A DNA stretch of 64,000 nt from Octopus bimaculoides (Eukaryota), in assembly GCF_001194135.2 (NCBI RefSeq), contig NC_068995.1, positions 50,092,852-50,156,851 of the forward strand. Direction: 5' to 3'. The notes below the pieces were generated by a model. The model searched no databases. It was not told the origin of the DNA and saw nothing but the letters and a program-made list of their open reading frames with translations. Position numbers and translations under genes: made by a program. This document shows, piece by piece, positions 1 to 22,007 of this stretch (positions are counted from its first letter, which is position 1; every line of letters begins with the position of its first letter).

Positions 1-119
1 TTTACAAATAAAAAAAAAATTCAGATGTAAAGTATGTTTGGCATTTTTCTCATATCAGTTAACAAAGACATGTAGTACTTTCGTTTTTCTATACGAGGCG
101 GTACCATGGCTAGTGAGGT

Positions 120-268
120 AATTTTGAGGCGTGGCTATTGTTTATTGAAAGCTATATATCTTTTAATAGCACTTTCGATTATCTGCTCTTACATTCCTCA
201 CTCGATTTGTAAACATTTATTCGAAATTTGCGCCAGAACACACACATACGCAAAAATATATATTGCAG
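120..268 (+). ncRNA. Cassette 1 candidate non-coding exon (5' part degenerate)
   Basis: 20-mer at 179-198; donor CAG|GTGAGT with GT at 269-270; the GGAATG arm is absent; 5' boundary approximate. Confidence 0.4.
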
Positions 269-1099
269 GTGAGTAGAGATTCAGTCACTTCTATTTAAGC
301 CTTGATCTCAAATTTGCTCGTAAATTCATAATAAACATAACTTTTGATGCAGTTTTCTGTGTCCATATTCAACTAATTGGATTTTTTGTCTCTTAAAATG
401 TATATACAGTATGTTATCTGCATACTGCAGATAACATGTCTTTAGATATTTAGGTGATTCGAGATTCACTGAGTCAATCAAACTAAACCACTTTGTATAA
501 TCTGTAGGAAAGAAGCGTATTACGAATTATTATCTGTAATATATTTCTTCCAAAAAGCTGGTATTGATCAAATATTTAGGTGTTTCACATTGAGAGATGA
601 CATTTTATAAGTGCAATTTTGATATAAATCTCACTTTCCTTCGCGTTTTAATTGGTTATACTATTTTATGCACTTGAGATACAGAAGACCTGGTATCGAT
701 GTTAAAACAGGTGAGTGATGATGACTAGATCATGGTTTAAAAATATTAAAAAAACATTCAAGTTGAGTTTATGATTACATATAACATGTTCTCTACTTTT
801 ACGTATCTGTTTGCATCTACCTAACAGGGCATTTTCTTTCTACTATTTAATTCTTAGTTCGGTTTATATACTGTTTATGCGGCTGTGTGAGTGTACTCGT
901 TTTGATAAACTACAGAATACAATTTCTCTGCTATTTTTGACTTTTAGAGTCGATTTAACTTCAATTCATAAAATTTGCTGGCAAAGTGAATTCTAGATGC
1001 AAACTGCATGCGAATATATAAAATTATAACTATTTTCAGTCGACTCTAGTGTCCCACAACGTTCACTTTCTATCTCCCGTCCTCTTCCTTCTAAACACA

Positions 1100-1510
1100 A
1101 AGGACTTGTTGCCATATTCAACAGCGCCTGTGCTTATGCAAATGACACGGTCCTTTACTCATCTTTAACCTTCCTTAACTGTGCATCATCCACGCGCCAA
1201 ATTTGCATTGAACGTAAGCGAAGACCCTAAAGGCATCCTGCTGTAGGATCGTGGCCAACATTTTCGTTTTTAACAGTAAAATCTCAAGTGTTACTCATAT
1301 AAAGAAAACACTAGCACACAGCAACACTCAGCTGGAGCCTTCATAGTCGCTCCAAATTTTGGACCTCAATATCATTGAAATTCTCTCCTGGTGAAAGAAT
1401 GTCTTTAGCATAGCTAGGACATACATCCCAAAGATTGTACTTTGGTCTTCAAGGCCAGAAAATATTTCACTTCCCGACAACTATTGACATTCTGTCTACA
1501 ATGCTCCTCT
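1100..1510 (+). mobile_element. Degenerate non-LTR retrotransposon RT fragment (Jockey/CR1-like)
   Basis: Manual translation gives CAYANDTVLYSS (YADD-like motif) near 1130 and FKARKYFTSRQLLTF near 1450, both typical of LINE ORF2. Confidence 0.5.
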
Positions 1511-1854
1511 GAAATGGATGAAGTCACATGTATAAAGCTTGTATATATGTGGCCATGTAATTTTTGAAGTTATTTGTGTTTTACGAATTAAACAAGACAA
1601 AAATGTTCTGCATATAGTTCGCAAACTTTTCTATATAGTGGTTGTTTTCCAGTTGATAAGGCAGCTCCCCATCGGATAACAGTGGGGATTGAATTAACAC
1701 CCACTGTGAAATTTAGACTGGGAGTTTGCGACTGTAAATCTACTATAGGAAGTTAATATCTGAGAGGAGCAGTTCACAAGGGTGGCGTGTCAGGATTAAT
1801 ATCGATTGAATCATACAATTATACGATTAATAAAAGTTATCTCATATCAAAGTC

Positions 1855-2020
1855 AATTATTGAGAGTTATTGACGCATCACAAACTATTGATTTGTGAAG
1901 CGAGAATGGAATGCGGAAATCAAATAGCTTAGCAACAGTCTACAAGTTACCTGCTCTTACATTCCTAACTTGTTTTGTAATCACTTATTCTAAATCGGCA
2001 AGAGGACGAATTCAGCCGTA
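1855..2020 (+). ncRNA. Cassette 2 candidate non-coding exon (no donor at the homologous position)
   Basis: TCAATT Inr-like site ~1853-1858; GGAATG arm; 20-mer variant at 1947-1966; lower stem 1890-1904 pairs with 1969-1982. Confidence 0.4.
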
Positions 2021-3433
2021 TCAACATTCTACAGAGTTTCAGTCTGAAATTTGAGATCAGTTTACAATTTGATATAACTTGCTCTCCTCATTTTGTATAT
2101 CTACTTCCACCTTACAGGTTAATTTAATTTCTTCTTAAATAATTTTCTATGCAATCTATGGATTGTTTATGGCCTGTGAGTGTACACGTGTTGATCCGCT
2201 CTTACATTCCTAACTTGTTTTGTAATCTGAGTGGACTGTAGCAGCGTCAAATAAAGTGTCTTGCTCAACGACAGAGTATTTTCAATGTGACAGAATATTT
2301 TTCACAACTGTTCATAGAAAATATAAATTGATCCTAAACTAAACAAATTCTAAATTAATCTGTAGCTGTGTTAGCATTTCGGTTTGTAATTTTCCGTTAA
2401 CTTGTGAATGCAATTAGTTTATGAATTTTGACTATTGAATTTTTCAAAATTCAAGATTTCTGTCTTTGCTTTATGGTTTATTCAGAACGAATGACTTACG
2501 TTTGATCTTCGCAGATCCTCTGCCTTATTTCAATTTCTATCAGTTACAGACTGCTGAAGTATTCACGAAGAACAAAATGCATTTTTTAAATATTAGTTGG
2601 CAAATGCGTACATTTTCATTTCATGTGTTTTATTGTCTCTTTTTATAATATAATCATGGGAAGATATAAAGCTACACAGTTTATAATTAACGTCTTTCTG
2701 TATCCATATTTTGGTCAGTTAGAGAATAGTCAATTGGGATCCAATAAGTGAATTTTAATTGCTTCACCTTCTAAAATCTATATGAAAAGAGAATTCTATA
2801 ACCTATAAACATTTGTGTTGTCTTTCCAATAATTTGTGGTACCAAAATATTTAGATATTTCGCATTGGTTTACAATATTTTGTCGGTATACTGTCGATAT
2901 CAATCTAGATTAAAGATGAGAAAATTTCTTTCCTATTTCTCCATACAAATTTAAAATGAACATTTTATCGAATGAATCAGTATTTGTATGTTCATTGTGT
3001 TGCCGTCAGAAATATTCCATTGTCTTCTGAGGTATACTACGTGTGTAAACATCGTTTACAACATTTTGCAAAGAAGTGTCGAAAGCTATTTATATGCTTT
3101 AAAAATAACAAGATTAAAGTGAGTTTTGCATCTATCTTACTAATGTTTGTTTGTGGTGATTTTACTGAAGCTATAGCGGCCCCCACCACTGAGCGACTTT
3201 TGTACATTCTGATAAACAGTCGTATTGTACAGAGAAAATTTGCCGCGACAATCAGTACGTCAAAATATTGCGTAACACCCAACCTGAAATCTAAACCGTA
3301 TACTAGTAATCGTGTTTTTCTCTGTCTGTGTTAAATGGACTTGAGAGCAATGAGGTACCGCTAAGCATGTCAGGCCTGATATCGTTTAAATCATAATGTT
3401 GTACTATGAATTAAGTTATTATATATTAAAATC

Positions 3434-3601
3434 AATTATTATGAGGTATTCATCTATGATCGACAACTGATTTGTGGAACGGGAATGGAATGTTTATGTC
3501 ATCATAGTTTATGGAAAGCCCGTAGTTGTTGAGGAGTTATCTGCTCTTACATTCCTAACCCGTTTTGTAATCATTTATTCTAAATCGGCGTCACATAACA
3601 G
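3434..3601 (+). ncRNA. Cassette 3 candidate non-coding exon
   Basis: TATGAAT at 3405, TCAATT Inr-like A at 3434 (29 bp later), hairpin 3469-3572, 20-mer at 3537-3556, donor CAG|GTGAGT at 3602. Confidence 0.55.
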
Positions 3602-3681
3602 GTGAGTGAAACTTGGATCAAAACTCTACGAACATTTTGTCTGAAATTTAAGATAAATTTATAGTTACATATAACTTGTTT

Positions 3682-3734
<53 letters not shown>

Positions 3735-4738
3735 TTCTCTCTCTTTCTCTTTTCACCATGCAGGATAATTTGTTACTTCTTAAATAATTTTCTGTACAAC
3801 CTATGTATTGTTTATATTGCTGTTTGGTAAACGTGAGCAAATACTGATAAATTTTCTTTAACTTCTCGATATTTGAATTCCAATGAGTCAATTTAACTCC
3901 ATCAGTTCATGAATTCTGTGTGCAAAGAGAATTGTATGTTAACTACATATGAGTAAATAGAATTATAACCTACTTTGTGTTTAAGTATTTCATATCAAAG
4001 CATAATATATTGTCAATTCCGTGTCAATAAACATCTGACTATTCTAGAATTAAACGACTGTACTATATTATATATATTTGGGGAATGACGGATTAGGAAA
4101 CATTTCTAACCATTTATCATTTGGTGTCATCGATCTAAACTGAATTTTATACCTGATTCTTACATGTTTCGGAAAGAGAATTTTCAATGTGATAATGTTT
4201 TTTTTTTTTGTTTTGTTTTTTTCTTCTTCTGTTCATAGAAAATATAAACTGAATCTCTCAGTAAACTAATATGTAACTGTGTTAGTCTTTCGGTTGATAA
4301 TTTTCCGTTGTTTTGTAGACACAATCATTTTATAAACTTTGGTGAACGATAAATTAAAGAATTTTTCAAAACCCACTATAGTAATCGCGATTCACCTATT
4401 GGGGTTTATTATTTAAGCTTACGTCGATTCCTCCGTGGTGTTGTTTTGCATTAATAATAGAATAAATGTATACAAATTATAAAAATAATTAAAAAAATAT
4501 ACAGTACTGTTTCTACTTCGCGGATTAGAATGTAACACCCTCGATAGTCGAGAGATTACTGTACTTCTGTTTTTGTTTGTATGGTGGAATTGTAACTCTG
4601 GTATTAGCAGATACATTCCCTTTACCTCCTCTTCGTCCATACCAATCTAATTTGACCGTTTTCTTAAATGAATCTGTATTTGTGCAATCTTTGTGTTACC
4701 TTTAGGAAAATTTCGTAGTTTTCTGAGAACGTCTAGAT

Positions 4739-5013
4739 CAGGGGTTTTCAAACTGTGGTCCGCGGACCACAGGGGGTCCGTGGACAGCAAATACTTTTTA
4801 TGGGCAATTTGATTTTATATATGTTTTTTAATCGAAATCTTTTAATTGACAATAAACCTATTTGCTAAATACTGTTAAGTAAATAAATGTAAAAATATAT
4901 GTTATTTTAAGCAAATATTTATGTTTAAATTTCGTAAGCGTTTATAAGGGGGTCCCTAAGGTAAAGTCTGAAATATAAAGGGGTCTGCAAGTTTAAAAGT
5001 TTGAAAACCCCTG
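4739..5013. mobile_element. Non-autonomous hAT (Charlie/Buster-type) MITE
   Basis: Perfect 16-bp TIRs CAGGGGTTTTCAAACT; 8-bp TSD GTCTAGAT at 4731-4738 and 5014-5021 (NTCTAGAN target typical of Charlie/Buster). Confidence 0.9.
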
Positions 5014-5452
5014 GTCTAGATTGTTTGAACTTTTTGTTCAAAACGTTGTAACGTAATTTCTGAAAGTTATTTGTGTGTTTTACTAATTTAAGAAGGCACA
5101 AAAGTTTTGCATCTCGCTTGCTAACGTATGTGATTATGTTCAAGTTGATAAAGTGGTTACTGAAAGCCTTAACCACTGAGCCGTTCACTACAATATGTGA
5201 CAGCGACCACACTCAGCAGCTCTTGTACATTTGTACTTCTAAGAAACATTTTCACTATGTAAAGAAAACCGCAGTCGGAATCGATGCGTCAAAGTATACG
5301 TTAACGTCTAAATTGAAAAGTAGCTCGGATACTTTGTTGAAGTAACTTAACGGCAAAGAGATGTTGTTTAACTGGATGATGTGTTGGGCCCGTTATAATT
5401 TTAATTAAAGTCGGAAAATTGTGATATTGCTAAAATTCATTACAACGAAATC

Positions 5453-5620
5453 AAAACTTAAGAGGTATTGACCAAACACCAACAACTGGAGTATGAAGCG
5501 ATAATGGAATGCGTGTCTGATGTAGGTTTAGAAAGGCTTGCAGTACTTGATGAGTTATCTGCTCTTACATTCCTGTTTCAGTTTCAAAATATTTATTCAC
5601 AATCTCCGTAAGAACACTTC
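5453..5620 (+). ncRNA. Cassette 4 candidate non-coding exon (donor deleted)
   Basis: aatggaatg arm, 20-mer at 5555-5574, lower stem tgaagc/gtttca; the AG|GTRAGT block is missing before ctgaaat. Confidence 0.4.
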
Positions 5621-6846
5621 AAACCACCTCTTTCTGAAATCGAAGTGTAACTTATAATTAAATATTTTCACCGAAAAGGATATCTCCTTTCTCTTAGATA
5701 AATTTATGTACAATCCATCCCTTGTTTATGTGGATGTGTGAGTTTACGCGTTTTCTTCAACTCCAGTAACTTTTCTCTACTATTTTATATATTTGGATTT
5801 CAATGAATCAATTTAGCATCATAAAATCTGTATTAGAAAATATGCGTACTGTACATAAATATATGAAATTTTAGCGAATTTTCTCTCTTTCAAAAGAACC
5901 AATATTAACTAAATATTTGAATATATTTGTATATATATCAATTAAGTCAAAAGCCAATTTTGACAAATATTTAATATTGATTTACAGTATTTTGTTACTT
6001 TAATATTGATAAAAATAATAATAAATAGATGTTCTAGAATTAATCAACCATGTATATGATACATTTGTGGAATGACAGATCTTGAATTGCCGCTAATTAT
6101 TTATCGATCTCTTCAGTCTCAAGCGGGTTCAATACCCATTGTCTCTCAGACATCTCGGAAAGGGAATTTTAAATGATAGATTTTGTTTTCATCGTTGTTC
6201 ATCGGAAATTCATATCGAACATCTTAGTAAATTATTCGGGTAATTGCGTTAGTCTTTCGATTCTTAAGTAAAGGTAATTTATAAATTTAGGTGGAGACTT
6301 TGATGTAAATAATTTTTCAAAGCTTGGTTTCTGTTAATATATGTAAAAATATAAATAAATAAAATATTTAAACATTTCAAACTGAGTTACAATGTCGTTT
6401 TTTTGGTGAAGTGTGGATATAAATATAAACATTATTAATTTGAGTTTCAGTAGGGAGTCGTAAATGTGTGAGAATTTCTTTCCTCTTTGTTCGTACGCTT
6501 TTAATTTCGCTCTCTTACTAAATTCATTTGTAAAGTTTTACTGTTGTAGTACATCTGCTGGAAAAATTCCCTTGTTTTCTGGGTACCACCTACTGTATAT
6601 ACTTTGTATACAATATGGTGCAAAGTAATTATATGCGTTACTAATTGCAAAAGTTAAATAAATAAACCGTGTAAAGAAACAAAACAGTAGAAAGTAACTG
6701 GTCGACAGATTCTGTTCCCGCCTTACAGAAAAGGAACTTCACATCAAGGCGGTGCCATTAAAGTGGGCGGTACCTTAGGCCTGATACCATTTTAATGAAA
6801 GACAGAAGAATCTGCTATAAATAAAAAGTTACTTCATATTCAAATC

Positions 6847-7009
6847 GATTATTGTGAGGTGTTGATTCATCACCAAGTGTTTGTGAAACGAGTATGGAAT
6901 GTACATGAACAATAGCTTTTAGTAATTGACGAGTTATCTGCTCTTACATTCCTGAGTCGGTCCGTAAACGTTTATTCTAAATCTCCAAGAACATCAAATT
7001 GTATCGTAG
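6847..7009 (+). ncRNA. Cassette 5 candidate non-coding exon
   Basis: TATAAATA at 6816-6823, Inr-like TCGATT ~31 bp later, hairpin 6875-6973, 20-mer at 6934-6953, donor TAG|GTGAGT at 7010. Confidence 0.55.
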
Positions 7010-7489
7010 GTGAGTGGAAACTCGTGATTTTTCTTTTTTTAAATTTTTTATTTAAATTCCTCTGAAATTGAAAAATGATTTATGATTACTTGTAACCTAT
7101 TCTCTAAATTTTATGATAGTTATTTTCACCGAACAGAATAATTTCTTTCTCTTAAATACTTTTCTATACCACTTATGTATATTGTTTATGTGGCTGTGTG
7201 GAAGCACATGTTCTGATCAGCTGCAGGTGATATTTTTTTTTCTGTAGATTTCAATGAGTTAATTTAACTTCGTCCATTCATGTAATCTGTCAGCAAAGTA
7301 GGTATACAACTGCATATAAATTGAATTATAACCATTTATACGCTGTTTCTTATAACTAGTCCTCGCCAAATATGTCGATATTTCGTATCGAATTACAAAA
7401 TTTTATCAATTCAATAATGCTCAAAAAAAAAAAAAAAAAGGAAAAAAGATCTAGCTATTCCAGAGTTAATTGACCTAAATGTGCAGTCA

Positions 7490-7790
7490 TTATTGTGTAG
7501 TAAGAAATTTGTTTGCCAACTAAATGGTTTCGGGTTCAGTTCCCTTGCAAGGTACCTTGGGCAAGTTTCTTATACTATGCCTCCGGGCCGACCAAATCTT
7601 CGTGTGTGAATTTAGTAAACTGCAACTGAAAGAAAACCGTCACATGTGCGTGTATGTTTCGCCTGACAGCGAGTGTTTGTTTGTTTGTTTGTTTACGTCA
7701 CCGTAATTAAGCAGTTCGGGAAAAGAGCCCGATAGAATAAGTACCAAACTTTTAAAAAAGTTCTAGGGTCGATTTATTCTTTTAATAATA
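7490..7790 (+). mobile_element. tRNA-derived SINE, family A (CORE-like CCTTGGGCAAGT block), degenerate
   Basis: Same family as copies at 46748, 53975, 60552 (+) and 42890, 47390 (-): gggttcagt(t/c)cc...ccttgggcaagt...ccgaccaaa...gatagaataagtacc. Confidence 0.75.
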
Positions 7791-7804
7791 ATAACAATAA
7801 TAAT

Positions 7805-8040
7805 CCTTTCTACTCTAGGCACAAGGCCTGAAATTGTAGGGGAAGGGGCGAGTAGATTACATCGACTCTAGTGTTTCACTGATACTTAATTTATCGACCT
7901 CGAAAGGATGAAAGGCAAAGTCGACCTCGGCAGAATTTAAACTCAGAACGTAGCGACGCGCGAAATAACCGCTAAGTATCTCATCCAGTGTGTTAACGAT
8001 TCTGCCAGCTCGCCGCCTTAATAATAATAATAATAATCGC
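7805..8040 (-). mobile_element. tRNA-derived SINE, family B
   Basis: Reverse complement reads aaggcggcgagctggcagaatcgttaac...gaggtcgactttgcctttcatcctttcgaggtcgataaattaagta; matches copies at 33610, 35460, 44290, 44500, 62365. Confidence 0.8.
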
Positions 8041-8227
8041 ACCGTGTAAAAATAAAATGCGGTTGGAAACGACGCCTCAATAAACTATTAACGTCCGACC
8101 GGTTCCTAGTAATTGTAATTCTGTTAAGGACTAAAATTGTCGTTTAAGAAGGCGGCATGTTGGCTGTGATATGGTTGTGTTTATGTCATAAAATTGTTAT
8201 CAATATAAGCTACTTTCTATTCAGATC

Positions 8228-8382
8228 GATTACGAAGTATTGATCTGTCACTACCATCTAAGGTGTGGTATTATAGATTAATAAAAGCCCCGTAGTAGTT
8301 GATGAGTTATCTGCTCTTACATTCCTATCTCTGTAAACTTTTATTCTGACTTTCCGAGAGAGAATTTCATATCGTATTGCAG
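8228..8382 (+). ncRNA. Cassette 6 candidate non-coding exon
   Basis: TATCAATA at 8198, TCGATT 30 bp later, perfect 20-mer at 8307-8326, donor CAG|GTAAGT at 8383; GGAATG arm degenerate. Confidence 0.5.
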
Positions 8383-9000
8383 GTAAGTGAAGATTTTATT
8401 CATATTTTTAAAACGTTCCTCTGAAATTGTAGACCAATATATAATTACATATAACTTATTTTTCATTTTTTTTTTCAATTAGCAAGATTGTTTCATTTTC
8501 ATATGATTCCCTATACAAATGTTTGTGTAGTATTGTTTGAGTGTACATGTTTTGATGCTTAGACATTTGAGTGAATTTTATCATCACTTCAGTAAAAAAA
8601 ATTGTATGAAAAGGAAATTAAATATGAACTACATCTTGTCAATTTAATGTTGATTTAGAAAGAAAAAAGAAAAAGAAACTCACGGTACAATGTTATTCAT
8701 TCGTGACATGTAAGAACTATAATCTTAACTTTGTTGTCGTCATCTAAAGAAGATTTGGTATTTCTTTCTTCTGTCGTGTCTGAATAGGAATTTTAAACGC
8801 GATTTCGGGATTGTTCATAGAAAAATGGAATTGAACATCCAAATACATTAATCTGTGTAGGTTGGACAGTATTGCGGTCAAAATTTTCTTGTTTATTTTC
8901 ATATATATGTATGTATATGTATATATATATATATATATACACTTACATACATATATATGAAAATAAACAAGAAAATTTTAACTGCAATACTGTCCGACCC

Positions 9001-9038
<38 letters not shown>

Positions 9039-9355
9039 ATACAATCAACTTATAAACTTTGTTGTAGAATATGCGGTAAATAATTTATCAAATATGAGGT
9101 AAATAATTTATGAAAGCTCCAAATTCCTGTTATTTGATTACGGTTAAATCAAAAGAAAGGAGTTATGCGTACGATTTTTTTAGACCTACATTATTTCGGT
9201 CAGTCGAACTGAGTTATTAGCAAGTGTAATTTTGTAAAGGGAACGCTAGTGCCAGAAACGTTGTAATCTCGCGAGCGACCTGTTGTTGGGCCTGATATCG
9301 TTTTAATTAAAATCAGAAAATATTTCTACTATAAATATATCTAACCCCTGTATAC

Positions 9356-9531
9356 AAATTTATAGTGAGCTCAACAATTACTGATGTGTGAAATATGGAA
9401 TGAGAGAGAAAGTGAGGTATGTTTTAACAAAGCTTTCAGTAGTTCCTTAGTTATCTGCTCCTGCATTCCTGCTTCGATTTTTTAAAGAGTTATTCTCAAT
9501 CTTCAGCAGAACACATCAAATCATATCACAG
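9356..9531 (+). ncRNA. Cassette 7 candidate non-coding exon
   Basis: TATAAATA at 9330-9337, atggaatg arm, 20-mer with 2 substitutions at 9451-9470, donor CAG|GTGAGT at 9532. Confidence 0.5.
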
Positions 9532-10446
9532 GTGAGTGGGGATTCATTTATCTTTTTAAAACATTCTTCTGAAATTGAAGACTATTTCATAATTACATAT
9601 AAGCTAGTCTCTACATTTGTGTGTATAGTTTCTTCTCTTAAATAAACTTCTTTATAACCTTGTTCATATGGATGCGTGAGTACGAACGTTTTCAACTCCA
9701 GATAACTTTTCTTTGATATTTACATATTTGTATTTTAACGAGTCGATTTAATTTCATCACTTCATAAAATCAGTATGCAAAGAAAACAAATGTACGCGAA
9801 TTGCATGTAGATATATAGAATTATAAGAAATTTTATTCCTTCACAAAACTAGTATTAACTAAATTTTTATATTGATTAATCCGAAAATTAGTATTTACGA
9901 AATTTTTTACAAATGATTGGCAATATTTTGTTCATTCGTTATTGATAAAAATCTGGAATTTCTAAAGTTGATTGGCTAGAATAATGTTACATTTCTTCCA
10001 ACATTCGAAGCACTTCAAATTTTCACCAGATTATTTCCAAGAAATGCATAATTAAAGAAGTTACATCAAAGTAGAAAATTTAAAAAAAAAAAGTGGTGGA
10101 AGTTTGAAATGCTTCAAGTGGTTGGAATAAATTTAATATGATCCATTGATTATGCTATTCGATATATTTGTGGAATGCCGGGTTTGGTATTATTGATTAC
10201 AATTTATGGACTTGATATCTTCATCTCAGGAGTATTCAGAACCTAGTCTCTCAGACGTCTCGGATAATGATTCTAAAAGTGGCGGAATTTCTTTCGTAGA
10301 AAATCTAAATTGAACGTCTTAGTAAATTTTTCTGTGATTGGTTAAGTCTTTAGATTGGAAATGTTTGTTGTTTTGTGGATAATCACTTTATAAACATTTG
10401 TGTATTTTTTCAAAGCTCACATTTGTATATCTTCATGTACTTTTTC

Positions 10447-10850
10447 CAGGGACGTGCCGCCTGGGTAGGCAGTGCCTACCCTGCATAAAATAGATCGATA
10501 GTAACATTTTCCTTGTATGGCAAAATACGCACCTAATTCAATTTAATTACGAAGGTTACTCTACTTTGCATAAAATGCAAAATATCTTTTTTTTTTTTTT
10601 TTTGTAGGGTAGGTAGGTATAATTCGCCCCTGTCTTTCAATTTCAGTATTTAAGCCACACATAGTACTGCTGTAGTACACGTACTGCGTACATTCCTACA
10701 ACGTTTTCTTTACGTGCTATAAAAGCAGAAGTAATTCTGCCTCCAACTCAGTCGCGCATCTGTGTTTCGCTTTTTCTTTCTTTTTGCGTGTTTTACTACA
10801 TAAACGTCACCAACTGCCTACCCTGAGTAATTACTGACGGCACATGCCTG
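10447..10850. mobile_element. MITE with imperfect TIRs (probably hAT)
   Basis: CAGGGACGTGCCGCC at the left versus reverse complement CAGGCATGTGCCGTC at the right; internal repeat actgcctaccctg/agtgcctaccctg; flanks actttttc/attttttt resemble a decayed 8-bp TSD; interrupts the array unit. Confidence 0.6.
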
Positions 10851-11428
10851 ATTTTTTTCAAAGCTCAAATTTGTGTTAACCAACATTGTAGATCTAATGG
10901 GCAAAATATCAATATATTTCAAACTGACTCACGGTATTTTGGTTGTACGCTGTTGACCTATTTCTAGACTATACTTATTTAAGTTTCAGCAGGGAATCGT
11001 AAATGTGAGAAAAGTTATTTCATCTTTGTAAAAAAAATTATTTGACCGTTTTACTAAAATTCATCTGTAGTATGGTCTTAGTATTACTGTTAGAAAAGTT
11101 TCATTGTTTTCTGGGTACAACCAGCGTAATAAACTTTGTAAACAACGTAATGCAAAGTAATTTTTGGAAGCAAATTGTATGCTTTACAAATCACTAAAAT
11201 AAAGAAAACTATTCGCACTGCGTAAAGAGCATTGCAGTAGTAAAAGGCTAATTTTCAGATTGTGTTAGCACCCAGTCCGTAATCTCGATCGAGTACTAGT
11301 AACCTGAATCTGGTTAAGGAACATAAAGCCAAAAATGCTGTTAAGCTGGGATGCATGTTTGACCTGATATCGTTTTAATGGAAATCAGAAAATTTTGCTA
11401 TGAATACAAGTCATCTCAGATTCTAATG

Positions 11429-11607
11429 AATTATAAAGATATTGATTATTCACCAACTTCTGATGTGTGAATCGAGAATGGAATGTGTATATCATGTACG
11501 TTAACAAAAGCCTTTAGTACTCGACGAGTTATCTGCTCTTACATTCCTGAATCTCTGTAAGCATTTACTTTAAATTTTTGTGAGAATAACATCAAGTCAA
11601 GTCGGAG
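11429..11607 (+). ncRNA. Cassette 8 candidate non-coding exon
   Basis: TATGAATA at 11399, Inr-like site 30 bp later, gaatggaatgt arm, perfect 20-mer at 11529-11548, donor GAG|GTAAAT at 11608. Confidence 0.5.
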
Positions 11608-13744
11608 GTAAATAGAGATTCATCCATTTTTTGGGGGTTTTTTTTTTTTCAAAATTTTCACAGAAATTAAAGTATATAATTACATATAATTTGTTCTTCA
11701 TTTTTGTGAATCTGTCTTCACCTAATAGGATAGTTTCTCTTAAATAATTTTCTGTACACCCTGTTTATGTGACTGTACACGTTTCGATCAATTATAGATA
11801 ACTTTACTCTGCTATTTAGATTTCAATGAGTGAATGTAACTCCATCACATCATAAGTCCTGTATGCATCGGCAATTACATATGAACTACATTTTATCAAT
11901 TCTGTGCTGATAAAAATCTAGCTTCTCTAAATTTGAATGATTATACTATGTAATACACTTGTGGAATGACAGATCGGTTATTGTTAGATCTTGATCAATT
12001 GTTAATTACGGAAGTATGACATTGAGAATAGAATGTGAATTTCATGACTCAGAAATATAACCGGAGTTGTCTCCCGTACCTTCAAAAAAATAATTGAAAG
12101 CTTTTTTCTTTTAATTTATCCGTACCTTGTATTTCAAATTGTTCGAGAAAGGCGGAATATATACAGAACAATGTTATTTGACATCGTAGAACGTTCGTTA
12201 CATAATTATAACAGCTTGCAGATAAATAGCGTTTTTTGTCGGCAAGTACGATATGAAAAGTTATTTCCCCTTACATTCTTGAATAAGTCTGTAACCGGTT
12301 ACAACACTTGGAATCATTGTAGCTTGGTTGTGAAGGAGTCGCTAGTTTGTTGCCCGACTTACTTGAAATAGCAGCGAAATTTCCTTTAAATCACAACAGA
12401 ATTTCTTGGGTAAGTGCACAACTAGAAATAAAATGGTTGACAAATGATCTAATTTGTTCTCACTGTGGCACCTAATAGGGACTGTTTCACTTTTTTTTTT
12501 TTTAAAGCCTTATGTATTTTATATGTAGCTGAAGAAACTCTGGTACCCATATTTTACTATTTTCTAGATTGTTTTCCTCAACGTAGTCACTGTGTTTTGA
12601 TGATGTCGACTGAAACGAGGTTGTTGTGTATCAATTGTTGAATAATTTTCAAATCTTTGTTCATAGAAACGGTGCAATTCTGGTGCTGTGTGTCGTTGTG
12701 GGAAGGAATGAGACATCTGTGTAGAAGTGTAGCCACAGGTCAAGCCTGATGCAGCAGACTTAAGATCAAAAGAATGGTTGAGGAATTTTTTTGTGGGAGG
12801 ATGAGGTTTCTGGCAGTGTATATGCTATTAGCAGCAAGTAATCAGCCACAGATATTTTTGTGTAGATGTTGGAGGAGGGGCTAAAGAAGATAGTATTATA
12901 TCTCCACAGCTGAGAACATTCATGTATTAGGGTTTCATTGGTAAATCACTTAGGCAATCCTAGATAATGACAAAGATACACCAGCTCCAACCTGACAACT
13001 GAATCTCAGAATGGCTGTGTGGTTAAGGAGTTTGCTTTACAACCCACATGATCTTAGGGTCAGTGTTGCTGCACAGCATGGTGTGGGCCTAATTTATTCT
13101 ATTGCTTTAGATCAACCAAGCCTTACGAGTGGAATTGGTAGACAGAAGCCCATCATGTGTGTGAGTGTCTAAATTGTCTTTCCTACTTCTTAAATAAGAT
13201 GGTCTCAGTCAAAAAGCAGTGTTGTCATACTTACATTCTTGATAAATATTATGCATTCTCAAAGCAGTGGAATTAAAATTAAAAAAAAAAAACTTCATAA
13301 AAAAATAAAGGTCGGTGTCAGGAAGGGCATCCATCTATAAAAATATCTCACTTATCCATAGATGTACAAAAGGTACTCATCTAACATAGATTGTTCATTT
13401 ATTCATTTAACATCTCATTCTACAATGTACATCAAACTGTCTTTAATATTATGGATTGCCTGGTTGAAAAAGAAACATTTTCAGTACAGTTTATTTTTGT
13501 TTGTCGGTTTGTTTTTGTTTTAATTTTAAATTTAAGTTTAAGGAATTTTGTCATATTGTGCAAACTGCTCTCCAATTAGAGACAAGTGGCTTGAATAATT
13601 TACCAGATTTTTTTTCTTTGATTATTGATACAAATCGAGAGATAGATTCAAAATTCTTAAAAGAAATCTGACAAACAAATAAAGTTTTGAAAATTTAATA
13701 TCTTCATTATGAAGTGAACAGACAATATATATATATATATACAT

Positions 13745-14357: not shown

Positions 14358-16691
14358 GGTTGGTGAGAGAAGGAATTATGAAGCTAATTAGATGTATAGT
14401 ACTCTACAGAGGTTAAATTGTAGGGTAATGGATTGGAGAGGTTCCAATACTGCTGAGACAAATTTTGCCCACCGCCCTTCCAAAGTTGATGAAGTTGCAG
14501 TCAAGTACTGGTGTTGATCTAATTGATTGTCTCTTTCTTCCAGATGTGTGGCATTTTGCTTATATTAGGAATAACTAATCAAAAGAAATCAAGATCCACA
14601 TTAATACAAAAGTATTAAAAAAAAAAAAAATGTGTGATCAATAAGTTTCAAGTGAAGATTAAGATCACCTTGCATGAATACAGATAGCATTAAAAAAATC
14701 TAATTTTGATTAATCTTGACTTTTAATTGAAGGCCATAATCAATTTAATCAACCTCAATACTTGACTGGTGCTAATTTCATTGCTTCTCTCTCACCAGAA
14801 GTAGGAAAGAAATTGTTCTAATCACAATATTTGATTACAAGGAGTAATCATCGAACATCATGTTAATAAAAATAGTTAGAGGAAGTCTCTGCATATGTTA
14901 TTTAAAAATAAATAATTTATTAAATAACTAAAATCCTTCAAATTTTATACAAAGCAAACAGGAAGGCCAAAAAAAAAAAAAAAATGGTGGTAGAAATATG
15001 TTGGCAATTATTCAACTCTAAAGATGAGATGAATTATCTGAAAATTCATTTCAAACATTCAATTTAAGTTCACTTAAATATTTCACTGTGTGGCTAAGCA
15101 CAGAAGATATCTAAATTTAACTTAGCTCTAATTTTAATACAAAAATACTTGCTATCTTATCCCTACCACAGATAGGACAAGGATATTATAATGGGCATCA
15201 CTACCCACTCCATCCATCAAATAGTTCTAACTACAGTTTTTTTTGTTTTTTTTTTCCTGTTTTAAATGGTTTGGTCTAGAGAAACCTTCCAGACATAGTG
15301 CATTGTATGTTCCTGAACAACTAACTGCAAGAAAAATATTGGCAGGGAAGAAATTGTAAAGATTTGAAGCTCTGGGAAAGAAAAACAAAATGTATAGTCC
15401 AGAATCGAAACAAAGTGGAATTGATCTCATGATCTACAAGCAGCTCTGTTCATGCCAGTCCTATTCTTTCTTAAATGATCATTTACAGAATTCCTTTTCA
15501 TTTAATGGTTTATCATAGGCATCACAGTCATTGTTGTAACTTTTACTTTTCCATGCTTGCATAGATCAGATGAGATTACTCTGGGGCAGAGTTTTCCATG
15601 GCCAGATATCCTTCCTGTTGCCAACCCTTACCTGTATCCAGGCAAGGCAATAAATCTCCCAGTGTATCGAACAACGGCCAGCCCGCACATGGTTACACGA
15701 ACAACTGGAAACAAACAGGACAGTCTAAATTTTGTTTGCAAAGATCGTGCATAGGTCAAGAAGCTTGGACACGTTTCACTGCAGTGGACAGTGAGGCATT
15801 TGAGTTACATTTACCTGTTTCACTCAGAAACCACAGGTCAACTTGAGCTAATAGCAGCAGACATTTGTCCAGCATACCATGCAGTCAGACTGATACCGAA
15901 ACCACGGGACTGGGAAGCAAATTGCACCTACATAAGTATGTTCTCCTGATTTACTACAATTTTGATATCAAGTGTGAATCTGTTTAACATATATTTAGAA
16001 TTCCACTAAAAACTTGTAATTTTAATTTCATCGGGATGATAAGTCTTAAGTTAAATTATTTCTAATTAAGATAAAATGGGAAAGAACTGCTTTAAAATGA
16101 AATTGGTGTTGTTTTGGTTGTTCCTTCTAACAATAGCTGCAATAGCCATATTTTACTTGTTTTATCAAGCAAGTGCAATTCACTTTAGCTGCTAGGCAGG
16201 CTGTTACTGTAAGACATGGCTTGCATAATAAAATAGCCTTTTTGTAAGAGTTGTTTTGACTATTTATAATGAACAACATTTGAATCTACACTGTTGAAAT
16301 AATACAAACATACGTGTCTTGCATAGCCAAAGCAACAACTACAAAGCACTTTCATACAGCGCAAGGAAGGATTAACAACTTGGATTTGATAAGATGTGAA
16401 TGTTGTGATGATATTCAATAGAATTTACATTTTAAGTAATTGTTTTCATCAAATTATGTATACTAATAATGATGGATTATTTCCTTTTGTAAGTAATTAT
16501 AATTTGAAAGAAGTTTAGTCCAGTTAAGATAATGATAAAGTGTAATCCAATAAGTAATCTGCTGTAGGATATCTTAAGAATGAATCAGATAAAAACAGCT
16601 TCTTCAATTTGTGTGAAAGGTGCTAATTTGTTATAAGAAAATTAAAGTTGATTTCCTCTTTCATTATTCATTATTCGAGAAGTTTAATTTT

Positions 16692-16796
16692 TCACAAACC
16701 AGAAACTGACAAAGACCAGAGTCCAATTGTACTCAACCAGATAAATTCTTCCAATTTATTCTTGTGTTTCATCTGAATATGTTCCAGGAAGCCATC
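16692..16796 (-). CDS. Bcl-2-family protein, terminal coding exon (end of BH2 + hydrophobic tail anchor): DGFLEHIQMKHKNKLEEFIWLSTIGLWSLSVSGL*
   Basis: Strong acceptor ttttattttccttaatgcag|GAT. DGFLEH continues the BH2 motif (compare Mcl-1 RGW|DGFVEFF) in phase 0 with the donor after TGG at 23173. C-terminus is hydrophobic. Confidence 0.8.
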   Translation of the reverse strand, partial: DGFLEHIQMKHKNKLEEFIWLSTIGLWSLSVSGL

Positions 16797-16940
16797 CTGC
16801 ATTAAGGAAAATAAAAACATATGAGAAAATAGAATACAAAAAATAGAAAAATATGCAATTTTGGAGACTAGAGTACTCTTAAAAAAAGGTACATCCCTCT
16901 TTTCCTCACAACAGAAGCTTAAGGTTGAAATAGGTAGCAT

Positions 16941-17100
16941 AACCCTTTAACATTCAGATTACTCTGCCAAGTATATTTATCTATTCACTGTTTTGAATTA
17001 ATCATACATTACCTCATGGCTTTGAGAATTCAATGTGACTTTTTATAATGACATTGTAGGGTAGGTGTGAGAGGCTAGATCTGGCTGATATAAATATAAA
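16941..17100 (+). mobile_element. Fragment of a dispersed repeat starting taaccctttaacattcagat (possible TTAA-type MITE end)
   Basis: Related segments at 57951-57985, 58265-58370 and 58930-58975 (gaattaatcatgcatt..., ttgtagggtaggtgtgaga). Confidence 0.4.
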
Positions 17101-17367
17101 ATATTTTCAACTTTCTAAAAGTTTAGCTCCCCACCCCCTATCTTGTTCTAACTAACAAAAAAAAAAAAAAAAAAAAAANNNNNNNNNNAAAGTCCTTTTT
17201 TTCAGATCACTCATTTTATTGTGGCACATTATGGTATAGAGTTTCTCCCTGTTGTGTTGGTAGCCCTGACAAAGTTGTAATATCACGTTTATAACCGCTC
17301 CATTTTTACAATGTTATGCTTTTTGTATACTTATTTATCAATGCCTTAGAACAAAATTTCGACTGGG

Positions 17368-17682
17368 ATACACTGGGATGGAAAATTGCTCCCAGCACTC
17401 AGAGGCATTGAAAAGGTTGATAGACTGGCAACAATAGTAAATTTTCAAGGGAAGGAGCCATTGTTGGGAGTCTCTGAAATTCTAACATCTTTAGGAGAAC
17501 AGCAAGCCATGGCCGTTTACCAAGCAGTGAAGAAATGGGGTATAACCGACAAAATTCAGGCACTTTGCTCTGATACGAAAGTAAGCAACACAGGTCGAGT
17601 GAATGATGCCAGTACAAATCTAGAAAAGTTGTTCAATCGCAACCTGTTGTACTTCCCTTGCCATCATGCTGACACTGTATAG
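17368..17682 (+). pseudogene. DDE DNA-transposase remnant (hAT-related, HWDGK type)
   Basis: In-frame IHWDGKLLP...EKVDRL...LLGV...GEQQAMAVY...WGITDKIQALCSDT..SNTGR...LLYFPCHH: two catalytic Asp motifs and CxxH; truncated on both sides. Family assignment is from recall of the motif. Confidence 0.75.
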
Positions 17683-19727
17683 TCCTTATTCATTTTGGAC
17701 ATCACCTGGACAATGTATACTATAATACGTTATCATCACAAGCCTCCAATTCCAACCAAAATTTATGTACAAAAGATCTGGCAACATTTAGAAAGTTGCA
17801 AATTTCTAAATCATTGTGGCTTGTATGTAAAGTAACTATGACTGCATGTCTTTTCATTTCTTGATTTAGCATGATAAATTGGAAGGTTTATCCAAAAAAA
17901 GAAATAGAAAAAAGATACATTAAATAATTTGAAGGTGTAATGAACTAACAATAAAATGTACTCAAATACCCCTCGCACCCTGTAGAAGACATTTGACCAA
18001 TGAGCTGCACAGTGGTACCAAATCCCAAAACCAGATAGTAACAGAAGGAATTTAATAACAAAATTTCTGTATTGACAAGGAATAGAACAAAGTGGGCAAC
18101 AGCAGTATAGATCTATACACACGTGTCATCAGCAAGCAAAACTACAAAATAACTAAACATTTTGAAAATAATCTAATGAGAATTTTTTAAAACGAACTTG
18201 TTGCAAAAAATGTTTTAACAAAGTCCCAAAATAAGGTGTGATGAGGGGAATTTATACTAGGAAAAAAAAAAACAAAGATGAAGAGGTAACATTTGAAACA
18301 CTTTTTAAATAGAATGGTCACAGTTGAAACTTTCAGAAAAATGCATTTTTTGCACTTCTCTGTGCTCTCAAGTGTATGCACATATGAGTGCAAATCCTAG
18401 TCTGTGCAAAGGACACAGACTGGTTATTTTCAAGTCTGAAAATTTTCTGTTTCAGCTTTGTGTGACCAGTGATTTTCTGAATGAAAAAAAAAAAAGAGTT
18501 TAGGCTCCGGTTTCAGTCCCACTGTGTGGCGCTTTTGACAAAGTATGCTCTAGCGCTTGGCCAACCGAAACCCTTTGAGTGGGTCTGGCAGACGGAAACT
18601 GAAAGCTTGTCATGCGCGCGAGAGAGAGAAAGACCACTGGTACCACTTGATAACCGGTGTTAGTTTGTTTACGTTCCTCACAACTGAGTAGTTCGGCAAA
18701 AAAGAACCATAGAATAAGTACCAGGTTTAGAAAAGAAAATTTACTGGGATCGATTCCCTAACATAGCTGCAACCTAATGACTGCAACAAAGGTAAAACAT
18801 CGGGAACGAGACATTTTCAGAGCTGGCTTTAGGATTTATTATACACTACAGTGAAAAACGTTCCACATATGGCCATTTCGTATATTATCTTGAGCGCTAT
18901 GTCTTGTTCTCGATTATGTACAGTGTCTTTTCTTTGTTAGACAGTAAGGTTATTTGGCTGTTGAGTCTAGCAGGTCGGGCAACCACAGAAACGCCCGTGC
19001 TGGTTCGTTTTTGCGTAGTTTGGCCCAAGTAACAAATAAATATAAAAGTATGTCAGCCAACCTGAAGAGAGAAGCGATTTGCCTGCTGCGTAAGAAGATA
19101 AATTGATATGCCAGTGTGTGGGTAGATGAGAATGCAAACGTTTCGGACCAAACCTCTAAGTAATATGATGATACAAAAATTCGTAATTGTTAACAGACTA
19201 TTCATTTTGGCATGAATGAGGAGAGGTCGGAAAGTATGACGTTAACACATTCAAGAGAATACGTGACTGACATCTCACAAGAAGGAAATTCTGCTTTACA
19301 CATGACATATAAACCCATCATAACTTTATTATTATTATTATTTTATTTTTTGAATTTTCAGAAATTTCTCGAGAATTTGTGTTCTACACACGACTATGAA
19401 ATTTGTTTAAGTTTTCGAAATTTTATAAAATTTTAAAAAATTATTTAAAATAGAGTCTGAATTTTGGGGCTTAAATCCCCAGTAATTGACCCATTAAATG
19501 CTCAGAGTAACGATTATATTCTAGGTTCTGTTGGGTAACCCGACTCTTCCCGTTTCAAAAATAAAGTCAATTTGGCAAGATTTCAAAGCGAAATTTGTAG
19601 CAATTTAAAAAATGCTTGAAATATCAAGTGACAGCTGTAATTAGATCTACATCTATTCAAAGGAGGATGTAAAAATGCTCAGAGCAAAGAAAAGGAAACG
19701 AAAATTCACAAATATGAATTTCTACTC

Positions 19728-19821
<94 letters not shown>

Positions 19822-21787: not shown

Positions 21788-22007
21788 GTAAAATACATTG
21801 TACATTTAATACACATTAGAGATGCCCATAAAAGGACATCTGACCCGCTAGAAAGAGCAGCCAAAGCTCTACACCACAAATTTTTTATTCCTTTTCGAAA
21901 TTATCCCTAATTTTTTTGTGGTGTAGAGCTTTGGCTGCTCTTTCTAGCGGGTCAGATGTCCTTTTATGGGTATCTCTAATGTGTATTAAATGTACACTGT
22001 ATTTTAC
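21788..22007. repeat. Near-perfect inverted repeat, 93-bp arms, 34-nt loop
   Basis: Arm 21788-21880 is the reverse complement of 21915-22007 with 2 differences. Confidence 0.95.

What the first reader, a model, noticed from the sequence alone, without database searches (positions are those of the whole stretch)
100..11900. Tandem array of ~9 promoter + non-coding first-exon cassettes with no coding sequence
Seen: eight copies of a near-invariant 20-mer spaced 1.1-2.1 kb apart inside collinear but well-diverged units, plus a ninth partial unit at 711. Units 3, 5, 6 and 8 have a TATA-like box 29-31 bp before a TCAATT/TCGATT/TGAATT Inr-like site; units 2 and 7 are similar but weaker. Seven units end in a 5' splice site (269, 711, 3602, 7010, 8383, 9532, 11608), giving 155-180 nt exons with no conserved ORF. 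Established: arrays of alternative first exons (vertebrate clustered protocadherins, UGT1A) and arrays of promoter-containing small-RNA units (zebrafish miR-430) exist, but no such array is apparent here from a known family. Inference: this is either a bank of alternative promoters feeding one downstream transcript, or a family of independently transcribed structured ncRNAs. It converges on the 3' end of the Bcl-2-like gene.
Basis: partly seen in the sequence, partly recalled or inferred. Interest (0 to 1): 0.85.

Follow-up and report, generated by a model that had tools for sequence, protein, structure and literature searches.

The report
Old non-coding repeat array, invariant 22-mer
Next to an octopus Bcl-2 gene lies an old tandem array of about ten non-coding units that look like gene starts; only one 22-base sequence in each unit is clearly preserved by selection, and what it does is unknown.

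Summary
Window 1-12.7 kb holds about 10 same-strand tandem units of 1.1-2.1 kb. Eight carry a near-invariant block, really 22 nt (AGTTATCTGCTCTTACATTCCT). There is also a 34-nt internal duplicate, a decayed unit (donor at 711) and a divergent last unit. All predicted donors and TATA/Inr-like spacings check out, and there is no conserved ORF.

The right end of the array (u6-u9) is orthologous in Octopus sinensis and O. vulgaris, unit by unit. Paralogues differ by K2P about 0.5 and orthologues by about 0.08-0.10, so the array is old and is not homogenised.

Only the 22-mer is demonstrably selected: 5/176 differences among paralogues, and 65/66 identical between species against 90.9% in spacer. 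TATA, Inr and donor are no better kept than neighbouring sequence. I found no conserved RNA structure, hairpin or cis partner, so miRNA and structured-ncRNA readings are rejected. A U4 snRNA hit in unit 1 is an inserted truncated retropseudogene. The unit is not dispersed in about 114 kb of other sequence.

Best reading (about 0.4): paralogous Pol II-type non-coding transcription-unit starts that display an unpaired 22-nt recognition motif. Whether they act as alternative leaders, as lncRNAs, or at the DNA level needs expression data, which these tools could not supply.

The parts
1..340 (+). Unit 1 (u1). Its 5' part is cut by the window start. 22-mer at 177-198, donor CAG|GTGAGT at 269, short downstream block to about 340. 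Interrupted by a U4-like insertion at 84-165.
   Evidence: nhmmer 179-302, E 6e-20
560..1030 (+). Unit 1b. The 22-mer has decayed (about 620-645) but the donor CAG|GTGAGT at 711 is perfect and the downstream conserved zone is complete (blocks at 732-800 and 871-915).
   Evidence: (families D5, D6, D18); no profile hit to the exon core
1790..2290 (+). Unit 2. Upstream box, weak TATA-like box and TCAATT. 22-mer at 1945-1966 with one change (TTACCTG). Donor lost. Includes the 34-nt duplicate of 1949-1982 at 2194-2227.
3368..3950 (+). Unit 3 conserved zone. Box CCTGATATCGTTT at about 3375, TATGAAT at 3405, TCAATT at 3432, 22-mer at 3535-3556, donor at 3602, acceptor-like CAG|G at about 3772.
5382..5860 (+). 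Unit 4 conserved zone. 22-mer at 5553-5574 (perfect). Donor region deleted.
6773..7330 (+). Unit 5 conserved zone. TATAAATA at 6816, TCGATT at 6845, 22-mer at 6932-6953, donor TAG|GTGAGT at 7010, acceptor-like CAG|A at about 7137.
8155..8640 (+). Unit 6 conserved zone. 22-mer at 8305-8326, donor CAG|GTAAGT at 8383. The GGAATG arm is deleted here and decayed in O. sinensis. Orthologue at L001 about 27118-26600 (minus).
9284..9830 (+). Unit 7 conserved zone. TATAAAT at 9330, variant 22-mer AGTTATCTGCTCCTGCATTCCT at 9449-9470, donor CAG|GTGAGT at 9532. The same variant is present in O. sinensis and O. vulgaris.
11356..11900 (+). Unit 8 conserved zone. TATGAATA at 11399, TGAATT at 11427, 22-mer at 11527-11548, weak donor GAG|GTAAAT at 11608. 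O. sinensis has AAG|GTAAGT and a CATTTCT change in the 22-mer.
11971..12700 (+). Unit 9, the last and divergent unit. 22-mer-like AGTTATTTCCCCTTACATTCTT at 12259-12280 (identical in O. sinensis), donor TTGG|GTAAGT at 12410, spacer-type block TGTTCATAGAAA at about 12655.
   Evidence: E 0.0014 and 0.004
14903..23690 (-). Neighbouring Bcl-2-family gene, annotated 'Bcl-2a' in O. vulgaris. Exons at 23690-23172 and 16797-14903. Its 3' end faces the array about 2.2 kb from unit 9.
32726..33081 (+). Nearest + strand coding exon downstream. Acceptor ttatttttgtag|G at 32744/5, then a 91-codon BH3-like ORF at 32806-33081. It is a candidate, untested, common acceptor for the array's donors.

Best explanation
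The array is an ancient, locally duplicated family of at least 10 non-coding units.

Shown from sequence: each unit is built like the start of a Pol II gene. It has a conserved upstream box (CCTGATATCGTTTTAAT), a TATA-like box about 30 nt before an Inr-like TCAATT/TCGATT, a non-coding exon of about 155-180 nt, and a consensus 5' splice site.

Shown by comparison: the only part that selection demonstrably maintains is an unpaired 22-nt sequence inside that exon, AGTTATCTGCTCTTACATTCCT.

Inferred: each unit is transcribed on the + strand from its own promoter. The transcript displays the 22-mer as a linear, single-stranded recognition site for one trans-acting partner, either a complementary RNA of about 22 nt or a sequence-specific binding protein. 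The many copies supply several separately promoted doses or variants of that site.

Inferred: the 5' splice site most likely supports productive elongation and splicing, either to the unit's own acceptor-like site or to a downstream exon. The transcripts run toward, and possibly antisense into, the 3' end of the Bcl-2a gene.
For: - 22-mer: 5 differences in 176 sites among 8 paralogues whose surroundings differ by K2P 0.46-0.78.
- Every 8-column window exact in at least 5 of 7 units lies in the 22-mer, apart from TCTGAAAT(T) and TCTTAAATA.
- Between species, 65/66 sites are identical against 90.9% in spacer, p=0.026.
- The u7 variant is fixed in three species.
- Each unit's nearest relative is its own orthologue, so conversion does not explain the invariance.
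- Gene-start anatomy is present in most units at consistent spacing.
- Donors are kept in u6, u7, u8 and u9 in both species.
- A zone of about 570 bp from the upstream box to about 350 nt past the donor scores 0.75-0.89 against 0.65-0.75 in spacers among paralogues.
- T>A skew on the + strand of the array matches the sense-strand skew of the neighbouring gene.
- No fold, hairpin or cis partner exists, so the motif would be accessible.
- The unit is not coding, matches no Rfam family, and is not dispersed.
Against: - There is no transcription evidence of any kind. No gene model sits on the array in the O. sinensis or O. vulgaris loci, and no ORF product from the exons is in the protein collection.
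- TATA, Inr and donor are not better conserved than neighbouring sequence among paralogues.
- Between species, promoter (93.3%, p 0.09), exon (91.8%) and donor (25/27) do not differ significantly from spacer.
- The 22-mer stays intact where the donor is lost (u2, u4), and the donor stays intact where the 22-mer is lost (u1b). The two are therefore not obviously one functional module.
- The 22-mer's distance from the predicted start varies from 78 to 101 nt.
- Nothing distinguishes an RNA-level role from a DNA-level role for the 22-mer.
Confidence: 0.4

Rival explanations
1. DNA-level regulatory repeat. The 22-bp block is a binding site for a sequence-specific DNA-binding factor, such as a multi-zinc-finger protein or a composite GATA + TEAD site. 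It is repeated about 9 times downstream of Bcl-2a as an enhancer, silencer or insulator cluster. The promoter-like and splice-like motifs are unselected relics of the duplicated ancestor.
For: - Only the 22-mer is under detectable constraint.
- Its conservation is independent of the donor, of the GGAATG arm and of the distance to the predicted start.
- There is no RNA structure.
- No gene model lies on the array.
- From my own knowledge, untested: the block contains exact AGATAA (GATA, minus strand) and CATTCCT (M-CAT/TEAD) strings, and GTAAACA (forkhead core) follows 12-15 nt later.
Against: - The invariance covers all 22 positions with sharp edges, including the 7 bases between the two motifs. 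That is more than typical factor sites need.
- The whole gene-start-like zone of about 570 bp is somewhat better kept than the spacer among paralogues.
- Donors are retained in 7 of 10 units and in both species.
- Short motif matches in AT-rich DNA are weak evidence.
Confidence: 0.25
2. Bank of alternative promoters and non-coding leader exons, analogous to Pcdh/UGT1A. Each unit's donor splices to one common downstream acceptor, most plausibly the exon at 32745 that starts the 91-aa BH3-like ORF, with Bcl-2a nested on the opposite strand in the long intron.
For: - The units form a same-orientation tandem array with promoter-like motifs and strong donors.
- The downstream + strand ORF is a real gene: 6 synonymous and 0 non-synonymous changes in its last 65 codons against O. 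vulgaris.
- Its first coding exon begins at a conserved acceptor, so it has an unassigned upstream non-coding exon.
- Two N-terminal isoforms (91 aa and 79 aa) are annotated in O. vulgaris.
Against: - Units are not donor-only. An acceptor-like site occurs in 7/8 units and a second donor in 5-6/8.
- The exons carry 25 ATGs against 22.8 expected, about 3.6 per exon, so upstream ATGs are not depleted as expected of mRNA leaders.
- The donor is lost in u2 and u4 with the 22-mer intact.
- The donor is not selectively conserved.
- A first exon in the 9-kb head-to-head interval between the two genes is a simpler source for that acceptor.
- No transcript could be retrieved.
Confidence: 0.15
3. Cluster of small-RNA (miRNA-like) genes in which the 22-mer, or its reverse complement (which shares the miR-1 seed GGAAUGU), is the mature product.
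For: - The sharp conservation of 22 nt amid diverged paralogues is the classic signature of a mature miRNA.
- A GGAATG about 60 nt upstream can pair with CATTCC.
Against: - Single-unit folds are weak: -12 to -27 kcal/mol per 100 nt, z from -2.75 to +1.9, on either strand and with the 22-mer as either arm.
- There is no consensus structure.
- The would-be star region is the most variable and indel-rich part.
- u1 and u6 lack the partner arm but keep the 22-mer.
- The arm covariation test is not significant.
- Rfam gives no relevant miRNA-family hit.
- The sequence is absent from the full-text library and from the octopus miRNA paper's held supplements.
Confidence: 0.03
4. Sm-class snRNA-like or spliced-leader-RNA-like genes: a tandem array with an snRNA-type promoter and a donor site in a small RNA.
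For: - The array has tandem organisation, an upstream box plus a TATA-like box, and a donor followed by a U-run (UUUUUAAAA) and a kept TCTGAAATTGAAGA block.
- A U4 model hit occurs in unit 1.
Against: - The U4 hit is an inserted, 3'-truncated retropseudogene bracketed by a 12-bp direct repeat. Units 3 and 5 have no snRNA similarity.
- Nothing reaches an Rfam gathering score.
- There are no conserved stem-loops.
- The U-run lacks a conserved Sm consensus. The G is not kept: u8 has GGGG where O. sinensis has AAAA.
- The predicted exon of 155-180 nt is at least 3 times longer than any spliced leader I know of.
- The T-run after the 22-mer in u7 is not kept between species, which argues against a Pol III terminator.
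Confidence: 0.03

Closest known systems
Clustered protocadherin / UGT1A variable-first-exon arrays
   Same: Tandem paralogous units in the same orientation. Each has its own promoter-like region and ends in a 5' splice site. Each unit shares a conserved element of about 22 bp (compare the Pcdh promoter CSE).
   Different: Here the exons are short and non-coding. The conserved element lies inside the exon, 78-101 nt after the predicted start, and not upstream of it. Units also carry acceptor-like sites. No constant exons have been identified. Promoter and donor show no selective conservation.
Genes with several non-coding alternative first exons (e.g. BDNF, NR3C1)
   Same: Non-coding 5' exons, each with its own promoter, that could splice to one coding exon. 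A candidate acceptor exists at 32745.
   Different: Those first exons are not paralogues of each other and share no invariant motif. Here upstream ATGs are not depleted, and a convergent gene lies between the array and the candidate acceptor.
Paralogous miRNA clusters (e.g. zebrafish miR-430)
   Same: A tandem array with a sharply bounded invariant block of about 22 nt in otherwise diverged units.
   Different: There is no hairpin, no conserved second arm and no consensus structure. Units are 1.1-2.1 kb.
lncRNAs built of repeated units that each carry a short invariant binding motif (NORAD repeat units, Xist A-repeat) or a highly complementary miRNA site (Cyrano, CDR1as)
   Same: Multiple copies of a short, unpaired, strongly conserved motif embedded in poorly conserved non-coding sequence. 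The length of about 22 nt is compatible with pairing to a small RNA.
   Different: Each copy here has its own promoter-like region and splice donor, and copies are over 1 kb apart. No partner is known. Pairing to miR-1 stops after position 10 (my own comparison, from memory).
Tandem snRNA / spliced-leader RNA gene arrays
   Same: Tandem short non-coding units with upstream promoter boxes. SL RNAs also contain a donor.
   Different: There is no Rfam match, no Sm site or stem-loops, and the exon is far too long. The one U4 match is an insertion.

Membership tests
miRNA gene cluster | Stable hairpin of about 60-80 nt with the conserved 22-mer in the stem | tested here: not met
   Folds on both strands and with both arm placements give z from -2.75 to +1.9 and -12 to -27 kcal/mol per 100 nt.
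miRNA gene cluster | Second arm conserved or co-varying among paralogues | tested here: not met
   The opposite region is the most variable and gappy part. Consensus structure energy is about 0. The cognate/non-cognate arm test gives p 0.06-0.12. u1 and u6 lack the arm.
miRNA gene cluster | Mature small RNA of 21-23 nt detected | not testable with these tools
   No small-RNA read data were available. The sequence is absent from the text library and from the octopus miRNA paper's held supplements.
Sm-class snRNA (U4 in particular) | Covariance-model match at the family's gathering score | tested here: not met
   No family reaches gathering score in 64 kb. U4 scores 30.3 bits against 46, only in unit 1, and that segment is an insertion with flanking direct repeats. 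u3 and u5 have no match.
Sm-class snRNA / SL RNA | Sm site (RAU4-6GR) flanked by conserved stem-loops | tested here: not met
   A U-run follows the donor, but the G is not conserved and there are no conserved helices.
Spliced-leader RNA | Short leader exon (about 16-50 nt) found on the 5' end of many mRNAs | not testable with these tools
   The predicted exon is 155-180 nt if the TATA/Inr prediction is right. No transcript data were available.
Alternative-first-exon bank (Pcdh/UGT1A type) | Tandem same-strand exons, each with its own promoter and a 5' splice site | tested here: inconclusive
   The motifs are present at consistent spacing, but they are not selectively conserved and no transcription start data exist.
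Alternative-first-exon bank (Pcdh/UGT1A type) | Variable exons are donor-only, with no acceptors inside the array | tested here: not met
   An acceptor-like pyrimidine tract plus AG occurs in 7/8 units, and a second GTGAGT in 5-6/8. These are sequence-level observations only.
Alternative-first-exon bank (Pcdh/UGT1A type) | Common downstream constant exon joined by all donors | not testable with these tools
   A candidate acceptor lies at 32744/5 before a selected ORF. No cDNA was retrievable.
Dispersed transposon / satellite | Copies elsewhere in the genome; terminal repeats or target duplications at unit ends | tested here: not met
   There is no unit-like sequence in the other 51 kb of the window or in about 63 kb of non-array sequence from O. 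sinensis and O. vulgaris, while an inserted SINE recurs many times. The units are orthologous one to one between species. No whole genome was available.
Pol III type-3 small RNA gene | Upstream box + TATA and a conserved T-run terminator at the RNA's 3' end | tested here: not met
   T-runs after the 22-mer vary in position, are absent in several units, and the u7 run is not kept in O. sinensis.

The most novel reading that the evidence does not exclude
The array is a previously undescribed kind of non-coding locus. It would be a bank of separately promoted short transcripts, each presenting the same unpaired 22-nt 'address' sequence. These would be used either as interchangeable leader exons chosen by promoter selection for the adjacent Bcl-2/BH3 gene pair, or as a multi-copy decoy or guide for one small RNA or RNA-binding protein. 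It has been maintained for far longer than the divergence of Octopus species.
Probability: 0.15. Interest if true: 0.8.

Novelty: new variant of a known kind. Interest (0 to 1): 0.5.

Why it matters
A 22-nt sequence has been held essentially invariant in eight or more paralogous copies while everything around it diverged by about 0.5 substitutions per site. It has no hairpin, no coding potential and no match to any known RNA family. That is a clear signal of function, and it cannot be filed under a standard class.

If the units are transcribed, the locus would be an invertebrate example of a paralogous multi-promoter non-coding array sitting beside an apoptosis-regulator gene pair (Bcl-2a and a BH3-like ORF). 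It would offer a tractable system for asking how a repeated RNA or DNA address motif is read.

If the units are not transcribed, the locus is a well-defined repeated cis-element whose binding factor could be identified directly. Either outcome is reachable with existing octopus RNA-seq, CAGE and small-RNA data.

Tried and rejected
1. U4-derived snRNA family. Rejected: the U4 match is confined to 84-165 of unit 1 and is bracketed by GTAGTACTTTCG/ATAGCACTTTCG. Removing it restores collinearity with u4 and u8.
2. miRNA precursor, on either strand and with either arm. Rejected.
3. Covariation in the flanks of GGAATG...CATTCC, which I thought I saw by eye. Not significant.
4. Conserved small ORF in the LSALTFL frame. 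Rejected: no common start, frameshifting indels and mixed donor phases.
5. Retrieving transcripts or other loci through ORF-indexed collections. Two array ORFs are not on record. A concatenated exon-ORF query gave no hit at E<=1. The downstream ORF has no transcript contig.
6. Metagenome scan for the 18-nt core. It returned nine chance matches with unrelated flanks.
7. Literature searches for the sequence, for cephalopod spliced leaders and for octopus snRNA arrays. Nothing relevant was found.
8. Using between-species conservation to find hidden exons between the array and the Bcl-2a gene. There is no power: identity is flat at about 0.88-0.92, and even the Bcl-2a coding exon scores 0.85-0.91.
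9. Minus-strand reading as tandem poly(A) sites. AATAAA is present in only 5 of 9 units.
10. Pol III small-RNA reading. T-runs are not conserved.
11. Resemblances recalled from memory to the U2, U6 and U7 snRNAs and to the RE1 and CTCF sites. I did not pursue these because nothing in Rfam or in the structure tests supports them.

Full report
**Observation**

The 20-mer TTATCTGCTCTTACATTCCT occurs nine times within three mismatches, all on the + strand, between 179 and 11548. None is expected by chance. The copies sit in collinear, diverged units spaced 1.1-2.1 kb apart.

The invariant block is really 22 nt, AGTTATCTGCTCTTACATTCCT. Some details need correcting:
- The copy at 2192 is only a 34-nt internal duplication of unit 2.
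- A divergent last unit lies at 12259-12280, with a donor at 12410.
- The 'partial unit at 711' has a perfect donor and a full downstream half, but its 22-mer has decayed.
- Unit 1 is cut by the window start, so the array may extend further left.

The TATA-like to Inr-like spacing of 29-31 nt is correct for u3, u5 and u8 and looser for u6, and the predicted exons are 155-179 nt. There is no conserved ORF. One frame is briefly open across the 22-mer in most units, but there is no shared start codon, indels break the frame, and the donors lie in different phases.

**What is conserved among paralogues**

I aligned whole units to get a baseline. Majority identity is about 0.65-0.75 in spacers. It is 0.75-0.89 across a zone of about 570 bp that runs from an upstream box (CCTGATATCGTTTTAAT) to about 350 nt past the donor. 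It reaches 0.98 only in the 22-mer. So the 'exon' is not better kept than the sequence that follows its donor.

In an exact-match test over 460 eight-column windows, every window identical in at least 5 of 7 units lies inside the 22-mer. The two exceptions are TCTGAAAT(T), 35-60 nt after the donor, and TCTTAAATA. The donor is exact in 3 of 7 units, the Inr-like site in 1 of 7 and the upstream box in 3 of 7, which are ordinary values for this zone.

**Other species**

The neighbouring ORF is a Bcl-2-family protein (PF00452). A 100%-identical mRNA contig maps it to two minus-strand exons, 23690-23172 and 16797-14903, so its 3' end faces the array.

The gene's orthologues in Octopus sinensis and O. 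vulgaris gave loci whose 3' flanks are syntenic with window 8.0-12.6 kb. Both carry the 20-mer at the three orthologous positions:
- a perfect copy (u6);
- the same two-change variant as u7;
- a copy with one change (u8).

Paralogue distances with the 22-mer masked are K2P 0.46-0.78, median 0.53. Orthologue distances are 0.076-0.10. Each unit's nearest relative is its own orthologue. So the array arose in an old burst, at least five times older than this species split, and has not been homogenised since. The 22-mer's 5 differences in 176 sites, two of them at an insertion boundary, must reflect purifying selection.

Between species the 22-mer is 65/66 identical, against 90.9% in spacer (p=0.026). 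Promoter (93.3%), exon (91.8%), donor (25/27) and downstream zone (92.6%) do not differ significantly from spacer. This species pair has little power. Identity is flat at about 0.88-0.92 across the region, and even the Bcl-2a coding exon scores only 0.85-0.91. The donors of u6, u7, u8 and u9 are retained in both species, and u8's donor is stronger in O. sinensis.

**What it is not**

- *Known RNA family.* Nothing reaches a gathering score in the window.
- *U4-derived family.* A permissive scan aligned the full U4 snRNA model to unit 1 at 30.3 bits against 46. That segment (84-165) is bracketed by a 12-bp direct repeat. Removing it restores collinearity of unit 1 with the stretch just upstream of the 22-mer in u4 and u8. 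Units 3 and 5 show no U4 similarity. It is a 3'-truncated U4 retropseudogene that happened to insert two bases before the 22-mer.
- *miRNA cluster or structured RNA.*
  - Single-unit folds are weak in every configuration and on both strands.
  - Consensus folding energies are about zero across the whole zone.
  - The 22-mer has no conserved cis partner within 700 nt.
  - u1 and u6 lack the GGAATG arm yet keep the 22-mer.
  - My by-eye impression of covariation was not significant.
- *Pol III gene.* T-runs are not conserved.
- *Dispersed repeat.* There is no unit-like sequence in about 114 kb of non-array sequence from three species, whereas an inserted SINE recurs many times there.
- *Anything already published.* The 22-mer is not in the paper library or the octopus miRNA supplements. 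Its 18-nt core finds only chance matches in metagenomes.

**Are the units alternative first exons?**

The anatomy fits a Pol II gene start, but several points weaken the Pcdh/UGT1A analogy:
- Most units carry their own acceptor-like site 115-170 nt after the donor, and a second GTGAGT about 65 nt later.
- Units that lost the donor (u2, u4) keep the 22-mer, and u1b keeps the donor without the 22-mer.
- The exons hold 25 ATGs against 22.8 expected, so upstream ATGs are not depleted as expected of mRNA leaders.

A possible recipient does exist. The only + strand coding exon downstream (ORF 32806-33081, BH3-like) is under purifying selection, with 6 synonymous and 0 non-synonymous changes in its last 65 codons against O. 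vulgaris. It begins at a conserved acceptor (32744/5), so it has an unassigned upstream exon. Two N-terminal isoforms are annotated in O. vulgaris. No cDNA could be retrieved to test this, and neither fetched annotated locus places a gene on the array.

**Best explanation and rivals**

My best reading, at about 0.4, is a family of non-coding Pol II-type transcription-unit starts. Their selected payload is an unpaired 22-nt recognition motif read by a trans-acting RNA or protein. The anatomy and the selection on the 22-mer are shown. Transcription, strand and partner are inferred.

The rivals are:
- a DNA-level repeated binding site (0.25), which explains why only the 22-mer is constrained but not why all 22 positions are;
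- a leader-exon bank for the downstream BH3-like gene (0.15);
- small-RNA and snRNA/SL-like readings (about 0.03 each), which are largely refuted.

**Novelty and verdict**

The array resembles known kinds (alternative-first-exon banks, repeat-unit lncRNAs) without meeting their defining features. I rate it a new variant of a known kind, with interest 0.5. The invariant 22-mer is a clear and unexplained signal of function. Existing octopus expression data would settle the matter quickly.

Noticed in passing
window 84-165 (+), flanking repeats 72-83 and 166-177: A 3'-truncated U4 snRNA retropseudogene (Rfam U4, 30.3 bits; 5' stem-loop/k-turn and stem-I strand well matched). It is inserted in unit 1 two bases upstream of the 22-mer and bracketed by GTAGTACTTTCG/ATAGCACTTTCG.
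   Followed up: yes
window 32806-33081 (+), acceptor at 32744/5: A 91-codon ORF with a BH3-like GQILRLLGDSF motif, head-to-head with the Bcl-2a gene. It is annotated only as 'hypothetical' in O. vulgaris, with 91-aa and 79-aa isoforms. The last 65 codons show 6 synonymous and 0 non-synonymous changes between species, so it is probably a real small BH3-type gene.
   Followed up: partly
window 4739-5013, target duplications 4731-4738 and 5014-5021: A MITE-like insertion in the unit 3 spacer. It has terminal inverted repeats CAGGGGTTTTCAAAC / GTTTGAAAACCCCTG and an 8-bp target-site duplication GTCTAGAT. It is absent from the other units.
   Followed up: partly
window about 7481-8024: SINE-type insertions in the unit 5 spacer. 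Related copies occur many times elsewhere in the window and in the O. sinensis and O. vulgaris loci. Another copy lies at about 13010-13160.
   Followed up: partly
window 8856-9003: A near-perfect 148-nt palindrome (74-nt arms, 92% complementary) around a (TA)n tract in the unit 6 spacer. It gives sub-threshold hits to several low-complexity miRNA families, and between-species identity is lower here (0.74-0.84).
   Followed up: no
window about 10446-10850: A possible terminal-inverted-repeat element in the unit 7 spacer (CAGGGACGTGCCGCC ... GACGGCACATGCCTG). It is flanked by a duplicated TTTTTTCAAAGCTCA(C/A)ATTTGT of about 22 nt.
   Followed up: no
window 2194-2227: A 34-nt duplicate of 1949-1982 (part of the unit 2 22-mer plus its 3' flank), inserted about 245 nt downstream. 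This accounts for the ninth 20-mer match.
   Followed up: yes
window 17386-17682 (+) and 52058-52793 (+): ORF fragments that look transposon-derived (transposase-like and reverse-transcriptase-like). The first lies in the intron of the Bcl-2a gene.
   Followed up: no
window 13601-13800: A 200-nt stretch between the array and the Bcl-2a 3' end that is 97-99% identical to O. sinensis, against about 90% around it. No feature has been assigned to it.
   Followed up: no
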